A DNA stretch of 64,000 nt from sequence record NC_028829.1, one strand, 5' to 3'. The notes under the pieces are model-generated. The model did no database searches and was not told the origin of the DNA. It was given only the letters and a program-made list of their open reading frames with translations. Each line of letters starts with the position of its first letter. The stretch's first letter is position 1. Shown one piece after another: positions 1,953 through 40,440 of this stretch. A program made the translations under genes and the position numbers.

Positions 1953-2008
1953 TAGTCGATGTCGTTTCGATGTAGCTATAATAGGCGTTTCGTGAAATTC
2001 ATGCAACC
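1953..2008 (-). promoter_or_regulatory. Sigma70-like early promoter plus conserved leader
   Basis: TTGCAT-17 bp-TATTAT followed by AGCTACATCGAAACGACATCGACTA; 31 nt identical to 17126..17156. Confidence 0.8.
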
Positions 2009-2031
2009 GTTTTTTTGCTCTAAAACGAAAA

Positions 2032-2051
2032 AAGGTAGCCGAAGCTACCTT
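2032..2051 (-). terminator. Intrinsic terminator after the paralog triplet
   Basis: AAGGTAGC-TTCG-GCTACCTT followed by a T run on the minus strand. Confidence 0.85.
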
Positions 2052-2063
2052 TCTGTATTTAAT

Positions 2064-2939
2064 TTAAGCACCAATTCGTTCTAACGTTGTTTGACTCAAT
2101 TTCGAATCACTTTGGGCTTCAAGAGAACTAACATCACTCCAAACGGTGATCTCATTTCCATTGATTACCCAGATCTTACCAGAAATCATTGCTATACGTT
2201 GCTCATCATCGTAGAAAAGCTCGTCTTCAGGTTCATAATACCACTCTAACGTGTAAAATGATTTATACCAAGCAACATCATCATTGATGCTACCTGCCGA
2301 AAGTTCAACAATACCAGCTTCGATGTTTAACGAGTGACCGCCACGAAGATACCAAATACCATCACCACCCGTTACTTTAACAATAGCAGCGTCGTTGATT
2401 GTAGGTAAATCGAGCAATTCAGTTCCCATTTCTGTATCATATCCAGTCGGGTTATCAGTGTGAACAGGCTTTGGGTCTTCAATAGGAACGATTCTTTCCA
2501 TCACGAATGACGCACCTTCAGATTCATTTGATACTCTCAATTTGAAACCTAAATCTTTGGCAAATCGTTCAGCCATTCTTTTGTATAATCGAGTACGCTT
2601 ACGGGAATCAGAACGATTTGTGTCATCAAATGCTGCAAATGTGATTCGATTTACGATGTTGTTTTGCATCACGTGCTTAATTTCAGAAATAACCGTGGCG
2701 AAAACAGTCATCGCGTCTTTAGAATCACCTTTTGCTAGGCTGTAATTGTAAGACATTGCACCCGCTGGCTTATGCATAAAATCGACACCTAGAGCTTTGC
2801 GATCTTCTTCATAATACAGACCAATCATATACTCAGCGCCGTCTATTTCGAAGTAACTCTGATTACCACGTCGTGCTGTTATGGGTGCAGCGCGGTTAAA
2901 CGCTTCTGTTAGCTCGTTTTGATATTCGCTAAATTTCAT
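2064..2939 (-). CDS. Putative capsid-internal protein, shared-domain family, paralog 1
   Basis: N-terminus MKFSEYQNELTE resembles the T4 IP capsid-targeting sequence; shares a ~110 aa domain with 2941, 3865, 12076 and 39511. Confidence 0.65.
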   Translation of the reverse strand: MKFSEYQNELTEAFNRAAPITARRGNQSYFEIDGAEYMIGLYYEEDRKALGVDFMHKPAGAMSYNYSLAKGDSKDAMTVFATVISEIKHVMQNNIVNRITFAAFDDTNRSDSRKRTRLYKRMAERFAKDLGFKLRVSNESEGASFVMERIVPIEDPKPVHTDNPTGYDTEMGTELLDLPTINDAAIVKVTGGDGIWYLRGGHSLNIEAGIVELSAGSINDDVAWYKSFYTLEWYYEPEDELFYDDEQRIAMISGKIWVINGNEITVWSDVSSLEAQSDSKLSQTTLERIGA

Positions 2940-2940
2940 T

Positions 2941-3861
2941 TTAAGATTCCATTATTTCTGGGTTTAACCACGGCGCATCGAATGCATTCACATATTTGGT
3001 AAACGCTGCATCGTCGGTGTATATTTTTAGACTTGTTTGACTAGTCAAGACGATATAGAAGTTCTTGAATGCACCAACCAGATATGTTCTATCTTCTTCA
3101 GGACCCTCACCATAGTCGAAAATTGGGTGCTGTAGTGCTGCTAACCATCCCTCTCGGTCAGACATTTCATACACAACGCGATTTACACGTAACCTAGCTG
3201 CAATTTCGTCAGCCGCTTTTACAACTGCACGACCTTGCCCTAGAACACCACTAATCATCGAACCATCTTCAACTTCAAACGCTCTTACAAATGCATATGC
3301 ATTGGCGTGAGATAAATTAACTTCAACATGGTCGCTATGTTCTTCAAACCCGACTGGACGACGTGCTCGACGTGAAAAGTCATCTACACGTTGTTGATAA
3401 CCCACATCATACACAATGAATTCACGACCTACGTTTCTGTAATCATACTGAGGGAATTCTCTAAGTTTCGCCTTTGTCATGATCTTATACAGTCTGAGAC
3501 GTTTATCTGCATCACGCTGATCAGCGTCATTGAACGCGCTATATGTTATTTGAGCAGGTGAATTGTCTCTAACAAAACTGAAAATCGCATCGACAACCGT
3601 TGATAATACGACTCGTGCTGTTTTATCATCTTTCTTAGTTAGATTATAACCACTACCATCAAGAGCTTTGAACGACACATCAGCCTTCATAGACTTCATC
3701 CCGTTCGGTTCACGTATAATGCCTTTCTGAATGTCTATTTCATAATAAACACCATCAACTTGAAACTCATACACGTTTAAATTTGGTAACTCACGGACGA
3801 GATTATATTTCGCTGGTCGATCTAACGACTCGTTGAGTCTTTGATATTCGCTAAATTTCAT
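2941..3861 (-). CDS. Putative capsid-internal protein, shared-domain family, paralog 2
   Basis: MKFSEYQRLNE leader; shared domain; C-terminal GQGRAVVKAADEIAARL resembles GNAT motif A. Confidence 0.65.
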   Translation of the reverse strand: MKFSEYQRLNESLDRPAKYNLVRELPNLNVYEFQVDGVYYEIDIQKGIIREPNGMKSMKADVSFKALDGSGYNLTKKDDKTARVVLSTVVDAIFSFVRDNSPAQITYSAFNDADQRDADKRLRLYKIMTKAKLREFPQYDYRNVGREFIVYDVGYQQRVDDFSRRARRPVGFEEHSDHVEVNLSHANAYAFVRAFEVEDGSMISGVLGQGRAVVKAADEIAARLRVNRVVYEMSDREGWLAALQHPIFDYGEGPEEDRTYLVGAFKNFYIVLTSQTSLKIYTDDAAFTKYVNAFDAPWLNPEIMES

Positions 3862-3864
3862 TTT

Positions 3865-4314
3865 CTACCTTTTATCAAGTCTTTCAAGTGAAATAGAACC
3901 CATGTCATACACAACCTTAAACCCAAGTTCATCAGCAAATCGTTTTGCAATACGTTTGTATACACTAAGTCTCTTACGATAATCATCCGCGTTCGAATCG
4001 CTAAATGCGTTGAAATGTATATAATTTACATCTTTGCTACGCATTAATTCTTCAATTTCAGATATAACAGTTGCAAAAACTGTAATCGCGTCTCTAGCAT
4101 CGCCTTTCGCGAGATTATAGCTCCATGTTAGTGATTCTCTGGACATATACATAAACTCAACATTTATAGATTTATCGTATTCTTCATATGCGAGTTCGAC
4201 GATGTAACGTTTGTCACCGACGTTAAAAAAGCTCTTATTTCCACGACGTGCTGTGATCTGTGCTGGTCGGTCAAATGCTTCTGTTAGCTCGTTTTGATAT
4301 TCGCTAAATTTCAT
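3865..4314 (-). CDS. Putative capsid-internal protein, shared-domain family, paralog 3 (single domain)
   Basis: MKFSEYQNELTE leader; consists only of the shared domain. Confidence 0.65.
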   Translation of the reverse strand: MKFSEYQNELTEAFDRPAQITARRGNKSFFNVGDKRYIVELAYEEYDKSINVEFMYMSRESLTWSYNLAKGDARDAITVFATVISEIEELMRSKDVNYIHFNAFSDSNADDYRKRLSVYKRIAKRFADELGFKVVYDMGSISLERLDKR

Positions 4315-4604
4315 TCTAAAAATTCCCCGTCGGGTATCGTGTCTTTGTCGATATTACCATTCAATGGTAGATCGTCGTCAAGACCGACATCTATTGATTT
4401 TAAATGTATTTCTAAGTCGTCGATTGATTGTTCAGTATAGAGGTACTTGCTTCTGTAATCGAAAAATGAGTAGCAATCTTCAGTGTATTCTACTTTCAAA
4501 ATCGTTTCATGACCTGCATGAACATATACTACGGGGTCGCCGAATGCGCTAATGTCCGTATAACTCATCTTCGTGTTTTTCAATAATGCAATTGCTTCTC
4601 TCAT
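4311..4604 (-). CDS. Hypothetical acidic protein
   Basis: ORF coupled to its neighbours. Confidence 0.6.
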   Translation of the reverse strand: MREAIALLKNTKMSYTDISAFGDPVVYVHAGHETILKVEYTEDCYSFFDYRSKYLYTEQSIDDLEIHLKSIDVGLDDDLPLNGNIDKDTIPDGEFLE

Positions 4605-5440: not shown

Positions 5441-6817
5441 TTAAAGTACGCGCCCACCGCAATGTTCGCCCTTATCAATCTTAGAGCGTACGTACGGAAC
5501 ACGCTCTTCGCTCAAATCTTTCCAGTATTGATCTGTGTTCGGTGTTGAGTTATGACCGTAGCCGTAGTTATGACCGATTTCGTGTAAGAATACGCGAGTG
5601 TTGTGGTCGTAGTTTGCAAGATCGTACATCTTCGACTCAGACTTGGTGTTTGCCGCCCATGCGAAAATCGCAAAGGTTGTGTGTTCGTCGTATGACGGTG
5701 CAACACCGTAAATTGAAGTGACGCCACCTGAATAACCAGGTGCAGGTAAGTAACCTTCATCGCCTGTCATGATCATGTTCGCACGGCACGACTCGAAGTT
5801 GTTATTGAACCCTGCATATGCTTTCATCGACGCGCCGATCAATGCGTTTTCACGCTGCATCTTCAAAATCTCAATTGCACGCACTGAACTGTATTCATAC
5901 AGTGGAATACGACCTTCCAAGTGAGGGAAGTTTCTCAGGTCATCAGTCTGCGGTGAGTAAGTCTGATATAGACCAGAACTGTTACCAGTCAGAATCGGTT
6001 CAATTAAGCCTAGTTTGTAACCAACTTGTACTGAGTTCGAGTTCACTTGTTTTTGCCATGTTTCCCACCACTTCGGGTCTGCCATGTGGAAGTATGATAG
6101 ATTACCATCACCACCCATCCCGGGGATTAATGTCGCGTTCACCATCAAGTACGGACGGTCAAACGTCTTATTCGCTTGATCAATCGATGTCTTGATGCTT
6201 GATAGATCTTCAGTTGTGTGTAACCAGTTCAACGCTTTAATCCAGAAGCCTGCCAGATCACCACCGTAGTTCATGTCGTTAACTGTGTAACATACACGTT
6301 TACCGAGCTGATAACGACAGCTCTCGCGGCGTAAGTTTGCCCAACCCACATCAAGCGAGCCGTTTACATCAAACTTGCTTGAGTCTGCATTCATGCGAAG
6401 CGTGTATTCAAAGCCGTTATCAAAACATGCGCTACCTGATACAGAACATGCCCACTTCAATGGTGCCATAGCAAGTGTACTAAGAGCACGCATATCATCA
6501 CTTGGTGACATTGTACGCATGTCTGTTGAATCTTTCCAGAACCCGTAACCGTTACTGTCCATCGAAATGTAAGTGCTATTGACGGTCTGACTGATTTCAC
6601 CGGTTTTCTTATACTCAGCGTCAGCTTCTTGCATCGCGCTGTTTAACCAGGTACGTAACACTGAGTTGTGATAACCGTTCGTCATATGAGGGAACGTGAA
6701 CTCAGTTGTGAAAGGACTCGGTGTTTCGACACCTTCAGCCGGTAGTCCCGTGAATGTAGCCGCTGTCGTTGACGCAGTAGAACATAACAATGCTAATGAA
6801 AGCCAAAGTTTTTTCAT
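5441..6817 (-). CDS. Secreted metzincin-type zinc metallopeptidase
   Basis: Sec signal peptide MKKLWLSLALLCSTASTTAA; HEIGHNYGYGH fits HExxHxxGxxH. Confidence 0.7.
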   Translation of the reverse strand: MKKLWLSLALLCSTASTTAATFTGLPAEGVETPSPFTTEFTFPHMTNGYHNSVLRTWLNSAMQEADAEYKKTGEISQTVNSTYISMDSNGYGFWKDSTDMRTMSPSDDMRALSTLAMAPLKWACSVSGSACFDNGFEYTLRMNADSSKFDVNGSLDVGWANLRRESCRYQLGKRVCYTVNDMNYGGDLAGFWIKALNWLHTTEDLSSIKTSIDQANKTFDRPYLMVNATLIPGMGGDGNLSYFHMADPKWWETWQKQVNSNSVQVGYKLGLIEPILTGNSSGLYQTYSPQTDDLRNFPHLEGRIPLYEYSSVRAIEILKMQRENALIGASMKAYAGFNNNFESCRANMIMTGDEGYLPAPGYSGGVTSIYGVAPSYDEHTTFAIFAWAANTKSESKMYDLANYDHNTRVFLHEIGHNYGYGHNSTPNTDQYWKDLSEERVPYVRSKIDKGEHCGGRVL

Positions 6818-12075: not shown

Positions 12076-13527
12076 TTATTCTTCGTCTTCGTCGTCTTTG
12101 TACTCAGATACATCAACGCCGTTTTCTTCAGCAAGCTCAATAAGTGCTTCATCAAATGACGGACCGAAGTTACCATTTATAGCGTATTCAAACACTTCTT
12201 CTTGATATGGATCTGAGTTATTCATCAAGAACTCAGCAGCTTCGCGACCCTCTAACCCCAGTACGTTAAATACCGCACCAATTGCAGATTCGCGAACATC
12301 TTCGTCATGGTCTGCTAGAAGTTCATCAACTCGATAACCTTGCTCGGCTACGTATTGGCGTTCTTCGTAATCATCTGTATCATCGACCATTCTATCCCAG
12401 ATATCTTCTGCCATATCACGACCGAATTCACTTTCGTAGCGTTTCGCATATGTGATACGTGTATCTGCGTCGTCGTTCTCGAAAGACCATTCCCATGCCG
12501 CTTCGCGCACGTCCTCGTCCGAGTCAAGAACAAGATCCCAGATAGCAAAACCATTTTCAGCAGCTTGCTTACGATGTTCCCCTTCATCAGATGTTGCAAG
12601 TTTCTCACCCATTTCGTAATCAGAGGCAATAACTGCATTACGAACGTCTTCGTCATCATGGAAAATCAGCTCTTCGTGCATCAGACCCCAACTAGCAATA
12701 CGAACTAGAGTTTGCCAATCTGCGTGTTCAATGATTTCATCTTCACGACCTTCATTGATCCATGCTTCGATTTGGTATTGATCTGCTTCATCGACGTAAT
12801 CTTCAAGAGACGGACCGCCACCGAATGCAGTGTCGTAGCTGCTAGGACGTTCGTGTTCATTGGTAAGAGTAAACGAAACTGAACCGCTCATACTCATCAA
12901 CGCTTGGTTAACGTCGTTGTCGCTCATTGAAAGAATGCTGCGCGTCACGTTCTTACGAACAGAACGGAAATCGTTTGCACCACCTGCTAGACGTGCAAGC
13001 CAGCGGTCGCTAATCTCAGTCGAATAGCCATATTCTTTACCGAAAGTCAGTGACAGTGCGTAGTACAGCATTGGACGGGAAATCAAGTCTTTCAATAGCT
13101 TTTTCTTACTTTCTTCGTCTAAGCGAGTTGCTTCGCGTCGATTGTTATTCAGTGCGTAGTACTCATGATTTGCTGGTAGCTCGTACGCTGCGCTGAAGTC
13201 ATATTCATACGGCTTCATGCCCATTTCTTCTTCATACGTCTCGGTGAACTCACGTAGAGTCGTCAATACACCAGAGAATACCGCAGCCGCAGAGTGTCCC
13301 GCTTTACCAGTCTGAGCATAACCACCAGAGTTCTGGAATGTGATTGAGAAATAACCAGGGTTGCTTTCGTCTACGCTAACCGAGAATCCTTCCCCCGCTG
13401 CGTTGAATCGCGCTGAAGTCTCGCCCGTCCCGTTCTCATGACCCCAATCCCAATCAATGTCGATATTCGCACGATCAGAAATCTCATCAAGGCGAACTTC
13501 TTGATAAAATTCGTTAAATTGTTTCAT
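12076..13527 (-). CDS. Putative capsid-internal protein: shared domain plus acidic HEAT/LRV-like repeats
   Basis: MKQFNEFYQEVRLDE leader; repeats LIFHDDEDVRNAV, LVLDSDEDVREAA, LLADHDEDVRESA; TCTAAATA box at 13556..13563. Confidence 0.65.
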   Translation of the reverse strand: MKQFNEFYQEVRLDEISDRANIDIDWDWGHENGTGETSARFNAAGEGFSVSVDESNPGYFSITFQNSGGYAQTGKAGHSAAAVFSGVLTTLREFTETYEEEMGMKPYEYDFSAAYELPANHEYYALNNNRREATRLDEESKKKLLKDLISRPMLYYALSLTFGKEYGYSTEISDRWLARLAGGANDFRSVRKNVTRSILSMSDNDVNQALMSMSGSVSFTLTNEHERPSSYDTAFGGGPSLEDYVDEADQYQIEAWINEGREDEIIEHADWQTLVRIASWGLMHEELIFHDDEDVRNAVIASDYEMGEKLATSDEGEHRKQAAENGFAIWDLVLDSDEDVREAAWEWSFENDDADTRITYAKRYESEFGRDMAEDIWDRMVDDTDDYEERQYVAEQGYRVDELLADHDEDVRESAIGAVFNVLGLEGREAAEFLMNNSDPYQEEVFEYAINGNFGPSFDEALIELAEENGVDVSEYKDDEDEE

Positions 13528-18203: not shown

Positions 18204-19349
18204 TTACACCCCGTTTAGATATTTCTCTGGGATTGCTAGTTCTGGTCGCTTCAGATATGCAGTAACTAAAGATTCATAGACACCTTCGACTGTCTGCTTC
18301 TGATACGCGATCATAGCTACCCCGAATTCCCATGGTTTTAATACTTTCTGACCTGCAATTGCATAGTCTTTACGCGCTAGATGACGATTACGAGCATAGA
18401 ACTGACGAACTGCATTGAATGAATTCGTAAGAGTCTTCGTCACGTGAGAATCAAATTCACGAATACGCTCAATCGTCGGTTTGTCATCTGCGAATAGCGC
18501 ATAGAGATCATCGTGATTGCCGTTCAAGATAGTTGTTACCAACTTCTTCGGAACATTCACTGAGTCTTTTTGCGAGTGTAAATCAACATACCATTGAGTT
18601 TTGATTTTCACAGATTGACCGTTTGCAAGACGCAAGATCATGCCTTCAATACCTTTCGTATCTCGCAATTTCTCAACGAAATCTGGTTCATGTGCAGTCG
18701 CTGGGTCGTACTCGTCAACAAGCCACTGTTTAACACGCATCAACGCAGATTGTGGAATGTCGTCGAAACTTACATAATCACCTGTTTCGTTGTCACGAAT
18801 ATTCAAGATAACCAGTTTAGCTTCTGGGTACTCAAGAACGATGCGGTTGTTAGGCGCACACCATTCCATGTTGACAGTCAAACCCGCTTGAGTACAATCG
18901 TCACAGAATTCCCACAAGTCACGATTCTCTGGCTTTTTGATGTAGCGATTAGCCGCAACAGCTTGCTCCGAAAAGATGCTTGTTTTTGACTTCAGCGCGA
19001 AGTTCTCACCTGACAAATACGTGCTAATCAATGAACCATCAGCTTTGTCCATTAGTTGTACAGTGGTCGTCAAGTCAAGTTCCATCGTAAAGGGATTCTC
19101 GTTTAGATTGAAGAATTTCTCCATCGGGCGAGATACGATACGAATCATGTCATCATTATCATCTAATTGAAACATGATACCACGCGCTTCAAGAGCACCC
19201 GGCAAAAGCCAATCAGAATATGAAGCAATATGATAGCTAAACACGCGAAACTTTTCACCAAGCGGTGAAAGATGATCAGCAAAGAAGAACTTGCCTTCAG
19301 CGTCATCAGCTAGAGACATCAAATTTTTGTATAATTCTTGTACGTTCAT
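18204..19349 (-). CDS. rnlA: RNA ligase 1
   Basis: KADGSL adenylation motif, KFFNLNE, EGMIL, KIKTQWY. Confidence 0.95.
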   Translation of the reverse strand: MNVQELYKNLMSLADDAEGKFFFADHLSPLGEKFRVFSYHIASYSDWLLPGALEARGIMFQLDDNDDMIRIVSRPMEKFFNLNENPFTMELDLTTTVQLMDKADGSLISTYLSGENFALKSKTSIFSEQAVAANRYIKKPENRDLWEFCDDCTQAGLTVNMEWCAPNNRIVLEYPEAKLVILNIRDNETGDYVSFDDIPQSALMRVKQWLVDEYDPATAHEPDFVEKLRDTKGIEGMILRLANGQSVKIKTQWYVDLHSQKDSVNVPKKLVTTILNGNHDDLYALFADDKPTIERIREFDSHVTKTLTNSFNAVRQFYARNRHLARKDYAIAGQKVLKPWEFGVAMIAYQKQTVEGVYESLVTAYLKRPELAIPEKYLNGV

Positions 19350-32261: not shown

Positions 32262-32909
32262 TTATTTTGTCCAAACTACCGAAGCACCTGAACCAGATTT
32301 CTTGTAACCGTACTTTGAAAGGTCTGGAATACGTTGAAAGCTGTCTTTCGCTGTAACTACACCGCGAGTAGCAATTTCTTTAGCCACGTCTCTTGTTGCA
32401 TTACCTGCTTCAATCTGCATAGACAGATCTGGATATTCTTGAGCAATGAATTGCATCATGATATCGTTTTTGCTTTTACCACTGATCACGTTCAACACAG
32501 TTTGAGTAATGTCAGTACCGCGAGTGATATGGAAAACTTTACCACGAGCACGAGACTCAACATCACGAATAATCTCTGCTTCGACTTCTTCAGGTACAAC
32601 GTTCAGTACGTAAGAAGTAAACGCCGTATCGAATGATTCCCCATTTGGGATAGTCAGACTGACATCAGTCCAACCATCAGAAGATGTACCATTGAATTTG
32701 TCATATGCATACGTTTTGATGCCTTCAGAGCGTAAAAATTCAGCGTTACGACCGTATTTACCAGCACCATAGTCAAGAGCAGTACCACCCGGTGTAAACA
32801 TACCTTTTTTGTATAGTTTAACTAGTGCTGCTACTTCTTTACCACGTATCGACGTTGCTGCGGAACTGTACTTTTGTACTTCAGTTAAAAATTCACCAAA
32901 TTGCTTCAT
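32262..32909 (-). CDS. Class I SAM-dependent methyltransferase with a capsid-targeting-like leader
   Basis: ALDYGAGKYG motif I, YAYD, FD..FTSYVLNVV; MKQFGEFLTE start at 32909. Confidence 0.8.
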   Translation of the reverse strand: MKQFGEFLTEVQKYSSAATSIRGKEVAALVKLYKKGMFTPGGTALDYGAGKYGRNAEFLRSEGIKTYAYDKFNGTSSDGWTDVSLTIPNGESFDTAFTSYVLNVVPEEVEAEIIRDVESRARGKVFHITRGTDITQTVLNVISGKSKNDIMMQFIAQEYPDLSMQIEAGNATRDVAKEIATRGVVTAKDSFQRIPDLSKYGYKKSGSGASVVWTK

Positions 32910-37694: not shown

Positions 37695-37852
37695 AATTAT
37701 TCTCTCTGTTCGTTAATTCGTTTCGATGAAGCTATATTAGGTCTATATTGTTTTTCGTGCAACCTTTTTCTTACAAAAAGTTTAAAATAATTTCAACGGG
37801 TGTTATGAGCAATCATAAATACACATATATTTCTAAAGGGTGAGTCTATAAA

Positions 37853-39481
37853 ATGATTGGATTTCAACAATTAAATGAAAACATGAGCGCAACGTACGAC
37901 TATTATCCGGCTCGCTCGACCAAAGAAAACAAATTCTTTGTGATCGACATGAAAGGCGAAGCCAGAGACATCGTTGTTTCGTTCACAACTAAAACAAAAT
38001 CAGATATCGGAAATCGCGGTAAACGTGCGTGGTTCTGTACTGTATCAGCAATGCGCGGCAAAAAAGGCGGTGTTACTATTCGTGAAATGGGAGATGAACA
38101 AAAGCTTCAACAAACTATTGTTAAAGTGGTTCAAGATTTCATGATCAAACGTCGTGCGAATGTCGTTTCAATGCGTGTGCAGAAACTAGGTACGGGTAAG
38201 ATGTTCGACTTGCGCGTTAAAACGTTGTTTAAAAAGCTACGTTACGGCTGTGATACAACTAAGATCATTGGCGTGGGTGGTGAAGAAATTTCGCAAGATT
38301 ACAGCTTCTTTATTGTAACCAAACCAGGGTATAATGCCGATAAGCTATTCGAAGCATCTGAAGAAACAATTAACGATATTGCGTTAAAAATGTCACTCGA
38401 AACTGATATTTCAAGCAAGAAAACGATTATCGTAACTGCCGATGCTGCGTATGACGACTATGAAGATGACGTACTAGGTAAATGGGTAGAAGAAAACCCC
38501 GCTGCACGTGTTCCAAATGATGTTCTTCAAATGCCTCAATATGAAGCGCGTGTAAGTTCGTCTGTTCGTTCTCAATTGAATGAAAGCAATGAACATGTTC
38601 TTGCTAATGCTGCGAAAGGTTTAATTGATATGAGTTTGAATCTTGAAACTGTGGCAGTTTCATTGAATTCATATATCGCCGAATCGAAGAAGCCTCAAAG
38701 CGTTCTGAATAGTATCATGGAATCTCGCTCACGTGCTCATGCAAGTCAGTATGAACGTCTTTCTTTGCAACTTATGCAGGAAGATTCATTTGCGGGTCTA
38801 TCGTCACTTACACAAGCTGCTATTGCTAGATACTCCGCGACTCGTTTTTCATGGAAGGTGAATGAAGAGTTATTACACGGAACGGGTGTTGATAAAGAAT
38901 CACAGATTGTCTCACGCATCGACCAAGCGTTTTCTGAAGCTGGTATGATTGCTGGTGGAATGACGTTATATCGTGGCTGTGAAATGTCAAGTAAACATGT
39001 GCGCTCTATTCTTGAATCTGGCTCGTTTGTTTCGACTGCGTTTATCTCAACGTCAATCGACCCTCTTGTTGCTTGTAAGTTCGTTGAATCAAGCTCTAAG
39101 AACATCATTGATTCAACTGCTAAGAATAGTAAATCAGATATGCGTTCTCTGCTTGAGTCAGATAAGAAAATGAATGTTGTATTCATCATAGAAGCGAGCG
39201 GCTTGCCTGTTTTAGCTTCAGGTAAACACGGTATGAAAGACTCAAAAGAGATTATCATCAACCGTAATACGATGTTTGAAGCTGACGTTGTTCAAATGTC
39301 TGAATACGACGCTGTAATTCGATTGAAAATCAAAGAAGATACGAAGCAAGGTGTATTGTCTGCTTTCAAAAAGCAAGAGCGTTTACACGAGCTTTCAGAA
39401 GTAGCCAATTTCATGCGTTCTGTTGATGTAGATATCGATGCAGATAGACTAACAAAAGAGCGTAGTCCTCTAACACCATGA
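37853..39481 (+). CDS. alt: Alt/Mod-like NAD:protein ADP-ribosyltransferase
   Basis: LYRG, FISTS and a catalytic E in DSKEIII; MIGFQQLNE leader; CATAAATA at 37814..37821. Confidence 0.75.
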   Translation: MIGFQQLNENMSATYDYYPARSTKENKFFVIDMKGEARDIVVSFTTKTKSDIGNRGKRAWFCTVSAMRGKKGGVTIREMGDEQKLQQTIVKVVQDFMIKRRANVVSMRVQKLGTGKMFDLRVKTLFKKLRYGCDTTKIIGVGGEEISQDYSFFIVTKPGYNADKLFEASEETINDIALKMSLETDISSKKTIIVTADAAYDDYEDDVLGKWVEENPAARVPNDVLQMPQYEARVSSSVRSQLNESNEHVLANAAKGLIDMSLNLETVAVSLNSYIAESKKPQSVLNSIMESRSRAHASQYERLSLQLMQEDSFAGLSSLTQAAIARYSATRFSWKVNEELLHGTGVDKESQIVSRIDQAFSEAGMIAGGMTLYRGCEMSSKHVRSILESGSFVSTAFISTSIDPLVACKFVESSSKNIIDSTAKNSKSDMRSLLESDKKMNVVFIIEASGLPVLASGKHGMKDSKEIIINRNTMFEADVVQMSEYDAVIRLKIKEDTKQGVLSAFKKQERLHELSEVANFMRSVDVDIDADRLTKERSPLTP

Positions 39482-39486
39482 TCGAA

Positions 39487-39512
39487 AAAGGGAGCAATTT
39501 GCTCCCTTTTTT
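39487..39512. terminator. Bidirectional terminator
   Basis: AAAAGGGAGCAA-T-TTGCTCCCTTTTT between convergent genes. Confidence 0.9.
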
Positions 39513-40398
39513 ATTCAACTCTAATAAGACTATGACCCCAAACTTCTTCAAAGTCGCTTACCTTTTCAACCATGTAAAGTGTGTTGTAGTCAAGAATCAG
39601 CATTTTACCATCTTCTAGAATCGCGCCCTTCTCTAGTAATTCAGCTTCTCCATCACCACCCCATGCAGGTTTAGCAATAATAGTACCTAGCAGACTTTCC
39701 CATATTTCAACCGTGTCTAAATTATCAAATTTATTACCATTGATTGATGCTTTAATTTGAACTGTTTTATCATTAACTCGTTTGATTGTAGCGAACCCAT
39801 TTGTCATACGAATCAATTCAAAATCACCAGGTCGTTCACACTCAAATAGCGTCGCCCATGTGAATGCGTTCACTCTAGGGAAATCAACATATGTGATCTC
39901 ATCTTCGACTTTAATACCATCATTTGGTAGTCGTCTAATTTCATTAGATGGGTTGTTGTTTTTTAATACAAACATACGCCCGTGCGTTTGTAAAGTATAG
40001 TCCATCTGCTTTGCGTATCGTTCAGCCATGCGCTTGTAAAGATTATAGCGTTTCTTTGCATCTCTGTCGTCATGGTCTGCAAATGCGCTGAATGTAATGT
40101 AATCTGGGTTTTCTCGTTTAGCCTTGTCAAACGTAGCTGCAAGCACCGTACTCATTACCATCAATGAATCTTTCGCGTTGCTCGATTTCTTTAATTCATA
40201 TGAATACTGACCATCTGGTCTTTTCCACATAAATGAAACGTCAATTATGCGTCCGCGTGCTTCATCTTTGCTAGTTATGATTGCTTTATACATAGTCCCG
40301 CCGATTTCAAAAAACGCTTCGTCGTCGGTCAGCCAGTCATAATTCGCTGCTCTATCAAACGCTTCAAATAGCGCGTCATATCCCTCGAATATAATCAT
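39511..40398 (-). CDS. Putative capsid-internal protein, shared-domain family, paralog 5
   Basis: LFE-AFDRAA leader; ITFSAFADHDDRDAKKRYNLYKRMAERYA; TATAAATA at 40422..40429. Confidence 0.7.
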   Translation of the reverse strand: MIIFEGYDALFEAFDRAANYDWLTDDEAFFEIGGTMYKAIITSKDEARGRIIDVSFMWKRPDGQYSYELKKSSNAKDSLMVMSTVLAATFDKAKRENPDYITFSAFADHDDRDAKKRYNLYKRMAERYAKQMDYTLQTHGRMFVLKNNNPSNEIRRLPNDGIKVEDEITYVDFPRVNAFTWATLFECERPGDFELIRMTNGFATIKRVNDKTVQIKASINGNKFDNLDTVEIWESLLGTIIAKPAWGGDGEAELLEKGAILEDGKMLILDYNTLYMVEKVSDFEEVWGHSLIRVE

Positions 40399-40440
40399 TT
40401 TATTGTCTCTCTAAATGAAAGTATTTATACGCACAAACGC

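What the first reader, a model, noticed from the sequence alone, without database searches (positions are those of the whole stretch)
2064..4315. Tandem paralog triplet with identical 5' DNA: a gene accordion or domain-shuffling locus
Seen: three adjacent genes share a 23-nt start block, and two share 39 identical nt (2902..2940 and 4277..4315) plus a further near-identical TAR RGN-coding stretch, yet the C-terminal halves diverge strongly or are absent (3865..4314). Inference: these short repeats are substrates for T4-type recombination, which could delete, duplicate or swap payloads behind a constant packaging leader. This resembles the known hypervariability of T-even IPI loci.
Basis: partly seen in the sequence, partly recalled or inferred. 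Interest (0 to 1): 0.7.

Follow-up and report, generated by a model that had tools for sequence, protein, structure and literature searches.

The report
Tandem phage genes sharing capsid-targeting-like leader
Three neighbouring genes of the T4-like Vibrio phage ValKK3 start with the same 23 bases, which encode a leader much like the tag T4 uses to load proteins into its head; related phages have gained or lost whole genes exactly at this shared block.

Summary
The window is Vibrio phage ValKK3, a KVP40-like relative of T4. Three minus-strand genes, A (3865-4314, 149 aa), B (2941-3861, 306 aa) and C (2064-2939, 291 aa), share an exact 23-nt start block. A and C share 39 nt.

All three carry an N-terminal domain of about 135 aa that belongs to Pfam DUF6934. 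The domain has a GNAT-like fold and also occurs at the N-terminus of Alt-type ADP-ribosyltransferases. B and C add a fast-evolving C-terminal domain; A is the N-domain alone.

Copy number varies among relatives from one to three genes. Two independent gene gains or losses have their junctions exactly in the block: gene A (ValKK3 versus VH7D) and gene B (CZ01 versus nt-1).

The leader MKFSEYQNELTE|AFD resembles T4's capsid-targeting sequence and ends in an L-x-E motif, the type cut by the T4 prohead protease. A leader model built only from metagenomic relatives ranks T4 IPII, IPIII and IPI 2nd to 4th of 1579 candidate T4 start sites.

My best reading is that these are head-packaged, injected proteins. 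This is inferred, not shown, and A-C have no late promoter. Payload swapping among B, C and D is not supported, because their C-terminal halves are collinear distant homologs.

The parts
3865..4314 (-). Gene A (ValKK3 ORF147), 149 aa. It consists of the leader plus the DUF6934-like N-domain only and ends at the domain boundary. It is present in ValKK3, phi-Grn1, phi-ST2 and in runs X1 and X2.
2941..3861 (-). Gene B (ORF146), 306 aa: leader MKFSEYQRLNE|SLD, N-domain and a B-type C-terminal domain. It is 86% identical to KVP40.0115.
2064..2939 (-). Gene C (ORF145), 291 aa: leader MKFSEYQNELTE|AFN, N-domain and a C-type C-terminal domain. It is the fastest-evolving member, only 58-63% identical to its counterparts in KVP40 and Va3.
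4293..4315 (-). 23-nt start block, copy at gene A. It is one boundary of the 453-bp indel.
3840..3862 (-). 23-nt start block, copy at gene B. It is the other boundary of the 453-bp indel.
2918..2940 (-). 23-nt start block, copy at gene C. It extends to a 39-nt identity with gene A (2902-2940 versus 4277-4315).
4311..4604 (-). Upstream gene ORF148 (97 aa, phrog_13971). Its 3' end (GGAATTTTTAGA) is the conserved left flank of the array in all relatives.
2029..2054 (-). Intrinsic terminator directly after gene C, marking the end of the transcription unit.
1978..2006 (-). Early-promoter-like TTGCAT-N17-TATTAT. Together with the terminator it forms a PeSL-like cassette at the right edge of the variable segment.
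   Evidence: consensus TTGYVH N17 TAWWAT taken from PMC4122927
39511..40398 (-). Paralog D, 295 aa (phrog_6387), with leader MIIFEGYDALFE|AFD. It lies between the DNA ligase gene and the Alt-like gene.
40422..40429 (-). TATAAATA, the T4-type late-promoter motif, 23 nt upstream of D and just after the ligase terminator.
37853..39481 (+). Alt-like ADP-ribosyltransferase, 542 aa. Its N-terminal residues 5-133 align with the same domain, and ATAAATA lies 31 nt upstream (37815-37821).
12076..13527 (-). Further family member, 483 aa, with leader MKQFNEFYQE and the N-terminal DUF6934-like domain.

Best explanation
A, B and C are tandem paralogs of a phage protein family. Each begins with a short N-terminal leader that ends in an (L/I)-x-E motif, followed by a ~135-aa DUF6934 domain with a GNAT-like fold. 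The same domain sits at the N-terminus of Alt-type ADP-ribosyltransferases. B and C add a rapidly diverging C-terminal domain.

I propose the following mechanism. The leader works like the T4 capsid-targeting sequence. It brings the proteins into the prohead core, the prohead protease removes it after E11 (B) or E12 (A, C), and the mature proteins enter the host cell with the DNA, as T4 IPI-III and Alt do. The variable C-terminal domain would then act on host or defence targets.

Because the leader is held constant, even at synonymous sites, every gene start carries the same 22-23 nt. Homologous recombination between these blocks adds or removes whole genes.

Shown here: the repeats, the domain family, copy-number variation, and junctions lying in the block.
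Inferred: packaging, cleavage, injection and the role of the C-terminal domains.
For: Repeats and paralogy.

Indels at the block:
- Gene A between ValKK3 and VH7D/Va3.
- The same 453-nt joint in runs X3 and X4.
- nt-1's C body sits behind the B-position flank and GTG start of CZ01.

Domain family:
- A profile of the N-domain finds 813 cluster representatives, among them stand-alone ~150-aa proteins and proteins with 2-5 copies.
- Large relatives score above threshold for DUF6934.
- The model of A has pLDDT 87.9.
- About 40 of the top 50 PDB matches are GNAT folds, Z 6.2-7.8, and they cover residues ~15-148, so the leader lies outside the fold.

Link to Alt:
- BFVD matches with TM 0.57-0.68 to at least 6 proteins annotated as Alt or ADP-ribosyltransferase.
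- hhalign of Schizotequatrovirus Alt residues 5-133 against the domain profile gives E 5.5e-5.

Leader:
- The family consensus is MKxFxxYIxE-LFDKP with an invariant E12.
- T4 IPII and IPIII begin MKTYQEFIAE|A and IPI begins MKTFKEF.
- T4 Alt is processed at ITE-6 followed by LFD (PMC5694885).
- A position-specific scoring matrix (PSSM) built from 17 metagenomic leaders ranks IPIII, IPII and IPI 2nd to 4th of 1579 T4 start sites, scoring 17.2, 17.2 and 9.1. The next score is 2.7.
- The leader is modular. Contigs L013 and L014 carry the same leader on a DUF6934 body and on a DUF6267 body.

Expression and constraint:
- Paralog D and the Alt-like gene each have a late-promoter motif.
- Codons 1-7 are identical in 90 of 90 synonymous comparisons, against 47% further on.
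Against: - No TATAAATA or ATAAATA motif lies upstream of A, B or C within more than 10 kb on their strand. They sit at the end of an operon in an early-type region next to cd and an nrdA.1-like gene.
- No virion proteomics or expression data were found for these genes.
- The [LIVM]xE-xFD motif is also kept in 43 of 45 internal domain copies. It could therefore be a structural element of the domain rather than a cleavage site.
- T4 Alt itself does not match the domain significantly by sequence.
- The GNAT-like Z scores fall in the range the tool calls common.
- The top PSSM hit in T4 is gp61.1, which as far as I know is not a known head protein.
Confidence: 0.55

Rival explanations
1. A-C are ordinary early cytoplasmic proteins of a hyperplastic region and are not packaged. 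The N-terminal conservation reflects the first helix of the DUF6934 domain and constraints on translation initiation. The resemblance to the T4 CTS is convergence in a short, simple motif.
For: - The genes lie in an early-type operon with no late-promoter motif.
- The motif is retained in internal domain copies.
- The predicted helix 3-14 is part of the model.
- Synonymous-site conservation points to an RNA- or DNA-level constraint.
Against: - The PSSM built from unrelated sequences singles out the T4 internal proteins.
- The same leader is found on non-DUF6934 proteins.
- The fold matches exclude residues 1-14.
- Paralog D and the Alt-like gene have late-promoter motifs.
- The T4 Alt cleavage site coincides with the family motif (PMC5694885).
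Confidence: 0.3
2. The identical 5' DNA is only a footprint of recent gene conversion or duplication among the paralogs. It has no function of its own and plays no special role in later rearrangements.
For: Within ValKK3 the block is identical in all three genes, while the rest of the genes is 32-54% identical at the protein level.
Against: - The same 22 nt are kept in distant phages such as D527, whose C protein is only 48% identical.
- Codons 1-7 are identical in 90 of 90 comparisons.
- KVP40 and QD01 B have synonymous changes yet keep MKFSEYQ.
- Two independent indels have their junctions in the block.
Confidence: 0.07
3. The N-domain is an active GNAT-type acyltransferase that modifies a host or phage target, and the C-terminal domain sets the substrate. 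This could hold whether or not the proteins are packaged.
For: - GNAT folds dominate the structural matches.
- The family consensus TGxG...VFATV and SRxxLYxRM recalls GNAT motifs A and B.
- Some large relatives also carry a canonical GNAT domain.
Against: - Z is only 6-8.
- The G-x-G loop is not kept in A-D (A has KGDARD, B has KKDDKT).
- There is no Pfam acetyltransferase hit.
- The co-occurring GNAT domains are separate domains.
Confidence: 0.12

Closest known systems
T4 internal proteins IPI, IPII and IPIII with their capsid-targeting sequence (CTS)
   Same: - N-terminal leader of the type MK[TF][YFS]x[EQ][FY], ending in (L/I)-x-E.
- Several genes sharing one leader on different bodies.
- Loci that vary between close relatives.
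- Minus-strand orientation among early genes (PMC9958956; PMC4122927).
   Different: - The T4 IPs are small proteins without the DUF6934 domain.
- The leader here is 11-12 aa rather than 10.
- T4 IP genes are known to be packaged and processed, which is untested here.
- No late promoter was seen for A-C.
T4 Alt (head-packaged ADP-ribosyltransferase) and its neighbours alt.-1 and alt.-2
   Same: - Alt-type proteins carry the same fold at their N-terminus.
- T4 Alt is cut at ITE-6 before LFD, which is the family motif (PMC5694885).
- The T4 record annotates alt.-1/alt.-2 as an old tandem duplication of the first part of alt. This parallels gene A, which is an N-domain-only copy.
- Paralog D sits beside the Alt-like gene and the DNA ligase gene, as alt does in T4.
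   Different: - A-D have no ADP-ribosyltransferase domain.
- T4 Alt itself is not significantly similar by sequence.
- alt.-1/alt.-2 is broken into two ORFs, whereas A is intact.
Pfam DUF6934 (PF22028)
   Same: - The reciprocal profile search retrieves proteins that score 49-80 bits for DUF6934.
- A-D and the Alt-like protein all give weak hits in the correct register.
   Different: - A-D score 15-18 bits, below the 27-bit cut-off.
- The family has no described function. The only paper that mentions it does so in passing.
PeSL-mediated modular shuffling in T4-type phages (PMC2839356, PMC4122927)
   Same: - Short conserved sequences flank variable ORFs and serve as recombination sites.
- The effect is seen between nt-1 and KVP40.
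- A PeSL-like terminator-plus-promoter cassette lies right after gene C.
   Different: The junctions here lie in a coding start block of 22-23 nt, not in a promoter/stem-loop cassette.
SPN3US gp53/gp54, paralogous head proteins with identical 15-residue N-termini (PMC5694885)
   Same: Paralogs that diverge overall but keep an identical N-terminal propeptide containing prohead-protease motifs.
   Different: This is a phiKZ-like giant phage with different proteins and much longer propeptides, and it is proven by mass spectrometry.

Membership tests
T4-type CTS-bearing internal head proteins | N-terminal 10-20 aa leader resembling MKT(Y/F)(Q/K)EF | tested here: met
   A, B and C begin MKFSEYQ. 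A family leader PSSM built without T4 or window genes ranks T4 IPIII, IPII and IPI 2nd to 4th of 1579 start sites. The A-C leader is 1-2 residues longer, so the fixed-length PSSM does not score it.
T4-type CTS-bearing internal head proteins | (L/I)-x-E prohead-protease site at the end of the leader, and actual cleavage there | tested here: inconclusive
   The motif is present: LTE12 in A and C, LNE11 in B, LFE12 in D. It occurs in 49 of 60 N-terminal family members. Cleavage cannot be tested with these tools. The motif is also kept in internal domain copies.
T4-type CTS-bearing internal head proteins | Protein present in the mature head and injected with the DNA | not testable with these tools
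   No virion proteome of a Schizotequatrovirus was found.
T4-type CTS-bearing internal head proteins | Late transcription from a TATAAATA promoter | tested here: not met
   No TATAAATA or ATAAATA motif lies upstream of A-C. The feature is met for paralog D (motif at 40422-40429) and for the Alt-like gene (37815-37821).
Pfam DUF6934 | Significant match to the family profile | tested here: met
   The direct hits are sub-threshold (E 0.003-0.006, 17-18 bits). A profile of A-D, however, retrieves 813 representatives, and the large ones tested score 49-80 bits for DUF6934.
Alt N-terminal domain | Homology or fold identity with the N-terminal region of Alt-type ADP-ribosyltransferases | tested here: met
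   BFVD gives TM 0.57-0.68 and probability 1.0 to proteins annotated as Alt or ADP-ribosyltransferase. hhalign of Schizotequatrovirus Alt residues 5-133 against the domain gives E 5.5e-5, P 66%. T4 Alt itself shows only the ITELFD motif.
GNAT acyltransferase superfamily | GNAT fold | tested here: inconclusive
   Most of the top 50 PDB matches are GNATs, but Z is 6.2-7.8, a range the tool notes is common. Foldseek TM is 0.3-0.43.
GNAT acyltransferase superfamily | Acyl-CoA pyrophosphate loop (Q/R-x-x-G-x-G/A) | tested here: not met
   The wider family has TGxG, but A-D do not keep it. The motif definition is from my own knowledge.
PeSL recombination cassettes | Indel junctions lie in promoter-plus-stem-loop cassettes | tested here: not met
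   The junctions lie in the coding start block. A PeSL-like element exists only downstream of C (consensus from PMC4122927).

The most novel reading that the evidence does not exclude
DUF6934 is the module that places Alt and a large, unrecognised class of phage proteins in the prohead core. The [LIV]-x-E / (A/L)-F-D-x-P motif at the start of every copy is then a prohead-protease site. On this reading, stand-alone proteins, two-domain proteins such as B-D, effector fusions (ADP-ribosyltransferase, zeta-toxin-like, deaminase, ParB-like) and giant proteins with 2-5 copies are all capsid-loaded. The giant ones would be cut into pieces there and injected. The T4 CTS would be the detached leader of this family.
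Probability: 0.3. Interest if true: 0.75.

Novelty: new variant of a known kind. Interest (0 to 1): 0.6.

Why it matters
How T4-type phages select proteins for the prohead core is still called mysterious (PMC9958956). The short CTS is documented only for the T4 internal proteins. If the leader plus DUF6934 module is a general loading device, three things follow:
- Hundreds of uncharacterised phage proteins, including fusions to effector-like enzymes, could be predicted to be injected.
- It would explain how Alt is loaded.
- It would give a portable tag for packaging cargo in Vibrio phages that are used in aquaculture.

The locus is also a clean natural example of a coding start block, rather than a regulatory cassette, acting as the crossover point for gene gain and loss.

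Tried and rejected
- The single-sequence AlphaFold model of C was unusable (pLDDT 45) and was not used for fold searches.
- The PDB holds no sequence relative of the domain or of T4 Alt.
- The Swiss-Prot AlphaFold search gave only weak RNase E/G and acyltransferase matches and did not list T4 Alt.
- A homolog search seeded with the T4 Alt N-terminus returned only near-identical T4-type proteins, so no diverse T4 Alt profile could be built. It did show a newer Pfam family, PF26846, on T4 Alt. That family is not in the local Pfam copy and I could not identify it.
- Atlas searches for the C-terminal halves of B and C gave nothing above noise.
- The KVP40 genome paper is not held. Searches for KVP40 virion proteomes or transcriptomes found nothing.
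- Public runs are held only as contigs. They showed other natural forms of the locus but cannot reveal rare recombinants in a lysate.
- The idea that A is a recent in-situ duplicate of C was rejected. A is 54-57% identical to every C allele, no closer to its own genome's C.
- The idea that B, C and D carry unrelated payloads was rejected.
Full report
**Identity of the window.** The region is 100% identical to Vibrio phage ValKK3 (KP671755), a KVP40-like member of Schizotequatrovirus in the T4 family Straboviridae. The three genes are ORF147, ORF146 and ORF145, all annotated as hypothetical proteins.

**The observation.** Three minus-strand ORFs lie head to tail with gaps of 3 and 1 nt:
- A: 3865-4314, 149 aa
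- B: 2941-3861, 306 aa
- C: 2064-2939, 291 aa

The 23-nt block AATGAAATTTAGCGAATATCAAA occurs exactly three times in the window, once at each start. No match appeared in 100 shuffles. A and C share 39 identical nt within an 88-nt stretch that is 86% identical. At the protein level A is 54% identical to C and 32% to B, only over the first ~135 residues, and A ends there.

**What the proteins are.**
- Pfam gives only sub-threshold DUF6934 hits for A, B and C. PHROGs places them in families of unknown function.
- A profile of the N-domains of A-D was scored against 1.84 billion cluster representatives and found 813 proteins at E<0.001.
- The hits include stand-alone ~150-aa proteins, ~290-aa proteins with the domain at the N-terminus, and 400-2200-aa proteins with 2-5 copies.
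- All nine large hits tested score above threshold for DUF6934, and two also carry a GNAT domain.
- With a 48-sequence alignment, the model of A is confident (pLDDT 87.9).
- A search of 48,161 PDB chains that does not rely on Foldseek returns mostly GNAT acyltransferases. Z is 6.2-7.8 over residues ~15-148. That is a GNAT-like fold at a level the tool warns is common, and the first ~14 residues lie outside it.
- The G-x-G loop seen in the wider family is not kept in A-D.

**Link to Alt.**
- Against predicted viral structures, the model matches many phage proteins at TM 0.57-0.7.
- These include at least six annotated as Alt or ADP-ribosyltransferase: HY03, Melville, phiAS5, Henu6, CF1 and SP18.
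- They also include fusions annotated as zeta-toxin-domain, deaminase and ParB proteins.
- The window itself encodes an Alt-like ADP-ribosyltransferase at 37853-39481.
- A profile of its N-terminus (residues 5-133) aligns end to end with the domain profile, E 5.5e-5, probability 66%.
- T4 Alt alone matches only at its first residues, MELITELFD.

**More members in the window.**
- Paralog D (39511-40398, 295 aa) lies between the DNA ligase gene and the Alt-like gene.
- A 483-aa protein (12076-13527) also carries the domain at its N-terminus.

**The C-terminal halves.** They fall into B, C and D types. Profile comparison shows they are collinear remote homologs:
- B versus D: probability 90%, E 1.5e-6
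- B versus C: probability 73%, E 3e-5
- C versus D: weak

Each type keeps its own pairing of N- and C-terminal halves in all genomes examined. Payload swapping among B, C and D is therefore not supported. A equals the commonest architecture of the family, the stand-alone domain.

**Comparative anatomy of the locus.**

| Phages | Genes at the locus |
|---|---|
| ValKK3, phi-Grn1, phi-ST2 | A+B+C |
| VH7D, Va3, KVP40, QD01, CZ01 (R10Z, R11Z and PVA23 inferred from 88% coverage) | B+C |
| XZ1 | remnant of B, plus C |
| nt-1, D527 | C only |
| 1.081.O | C, plus a second family member in a different position |

- In XZ1 the remnant of B was left by a deletion between two copies of TTACCAAAT.
- ValKK3 and VH7D are 96-100% identical on both sides of a clean 453-bp gap whose ends are the block.
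- The same joint, with 23 nt fitting both sides, is present in contigs of two public runs. One of those runs also has an in-frame 618-nt deletion inside C. Two other runs carry A with 5 extra nt between A and B.
- nt-1's C gene has the GTG start and upstream flank that B has in CZ01, while its body is 95% identical (N-domain) to CZ01's C. This is a second, independent gain or loss with its junction in the block.
- Va3 is 93-100% identical to ValKK3 until about 60-90 nt into C. Identity then falls to 50-65% up to the terminator, and the next gene is different.
- C is the fast-evolving member: 58% identical between ValKK3 and KVP40, against 86% for B.
- A terminator and a TTGCAT-N17-TATTAT element lie right after C. 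They fit the nt-1/KVP40 PeSL consensus (PMC4122927).

**The leader.**
- Family members with an N-terminal domain typically begin MKxFxxYIxE-LFDKP, and the E is invariant.
- T4 IPII and IPIII begin MKTYQEFIAE|A, and IPI begins MKTFKEF...ITE|A.
- All T4 internal head proteins are said to reach the core through a CTS, and the leaders are removed by gp21. T4 Alt is processed at ITE-6, which is followed by LFD (PMC5694885). That is exactly the family motif.
- I built a scoring matrix from 17 ten-residue leaders of metagenomic family members, excluding T4 and the window's relatives. I scanned 1579 candidate start sites covering 94% of the T4 genome.

| Rank | T4 protein | Score |
|---|---|---|
| 1 | gp61.1 (MKTFKEFIKE) | 21.1 |
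| 2-3 | IPIII and IPII | 17.2 each |
| 4 | IPI | 9.1 |
| 5 | next best start | 2.7 |

- The leader is modular. In metagenome contig L013 three tandem DUF6934 genes share their 5' DNA. In its sister contig L014 the third gene keeps MISFKRYI but continues as a DUF6267 protein.
- In the window, a 215-aa protein with a weak methyltransferase-like hit begins MKQFGEFLTE.

**Constraint on the block.** Among C-type genes and A, codons 1-7 use identical codons in 90 of 90 comparisons of conserved residues. The figure is 69% for codons 8-22 and 47% for the rest of the domain. The block is unchanged even in D527, whose C protein is 48% identical. KVP40 and QD01 B carry two synonymous changes yet keep MKFSEYQ. 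So there is protein-level selection, plus either a nucleotide-level constraint or repeated homogenisation.

**Expression signals.** ATAAATA is depleted in the window (6 found, 13.8 expected). All six copies lie 10-56 nt upstream of an ORF on the same strand. One is a full TATAAATA 23 nt before D, just after the ligase terminator, and one lies before the Alt-like gene. None lies upstream of A-C. Those genes end an operon in a region that also holds cd and an nrdA.1-like gene. The T4 IP genes are also on the 'early' strand, so orientation says nothing, but the missing motif is the main weakness of the packaging reading for A-C.

**Conclusion.** The repeats are real and have been used for gene gain and loss. 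The genes belong to a widespread DUF6934 family related to the N-terminus of Alt. Their shared start encodes a leader that looks like the T4 capsid-targeting sequence with a protease site. Head packaging and injection are the best-supported function, but they remain an inference. A precedent for an N-domain-only tandem copy exists in T4: the record annotates alt.-1/alt.-2 as an old duplication of the first part of alt.

Noticed in passing
window 12076-13527 (-): A 483-aa protein (phrog_13195) with an N-terminal DUF6934-like domain (E 3.7e-10) and leader MKQFNEFYQE. It follows a terminator and a TCTAAATA motif. It is a further member of the family, with a long unknown C-terminal part.
   Followed up: partly
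window 32262-32909 (-): A 215-aa protein that begins MKQFGEFLTE, the best window hit of the CTS-like leader model (11.8). It has only a weak methyltransferase-type Pfam hit (E 0.015) and a DYGAGKYG motif. It may be another leader-bearing protein.
   Followed up: partly
T4 (L017) 18966-19130 (-), gene 61.1: T4 gp61.1 (54 aa, hypothetical) begins MKTFKEFIKE and scores higher on the leader model than IPII and IPIII. It is either an unrecognised CTS-bearing protein or a false positive.
   Followed up: no
window 37815-37821, 40422-40429 and four other sites: ATAAATA is under-represented (6 found, 13.8 expected). All six copies lie 10-56 nt upstream of an ORF on the same strand, as expected for T4-type late promoters.
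   Followed up: partly
window 1978-2054 (-): A terminator followed by TTGCAT-N17-TATTAT. This is a PeSL-like cassette at the downstream edge of the variable segment. The gene after it differs in Va3 and is absent in KVP40.
   Followed up: partly
window 5441-6817 (-): A 458-aa protein with a signal peptide and HEIGHNYGYGH, giving weak reprolysin-type metallopeptidase hits. A secreted zinc protease would be unusual in a phage.
   Followed up: no
L003 (phage XZ1) 3733-3869; run X3 contig: Two further natural lesions. In XZ1, B is reduced to a 28-codon remnant by a deletion between TTACCAAAT repeats. One public run has an in-frame 618-nt deletion inside C (window 2112-2729).
   Followed up: yes
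L013 2295-3639 and L014 382-1292 (metagenome contigs): A tandem triplet of stand-alone DUF6934 genes with shared 5' DNA in an unrelated uncultured phage. In the sister contig the third gene has the same leader on a DUF6267 body.
   Followed up: yes
T4 Alt hits: T4 Alt carries a newer Pfam family, PF26846, in its N-terminal part. That family is absent from the local Pfam copy, and its relation to DUF6934 is unknown.
   Followed up: no
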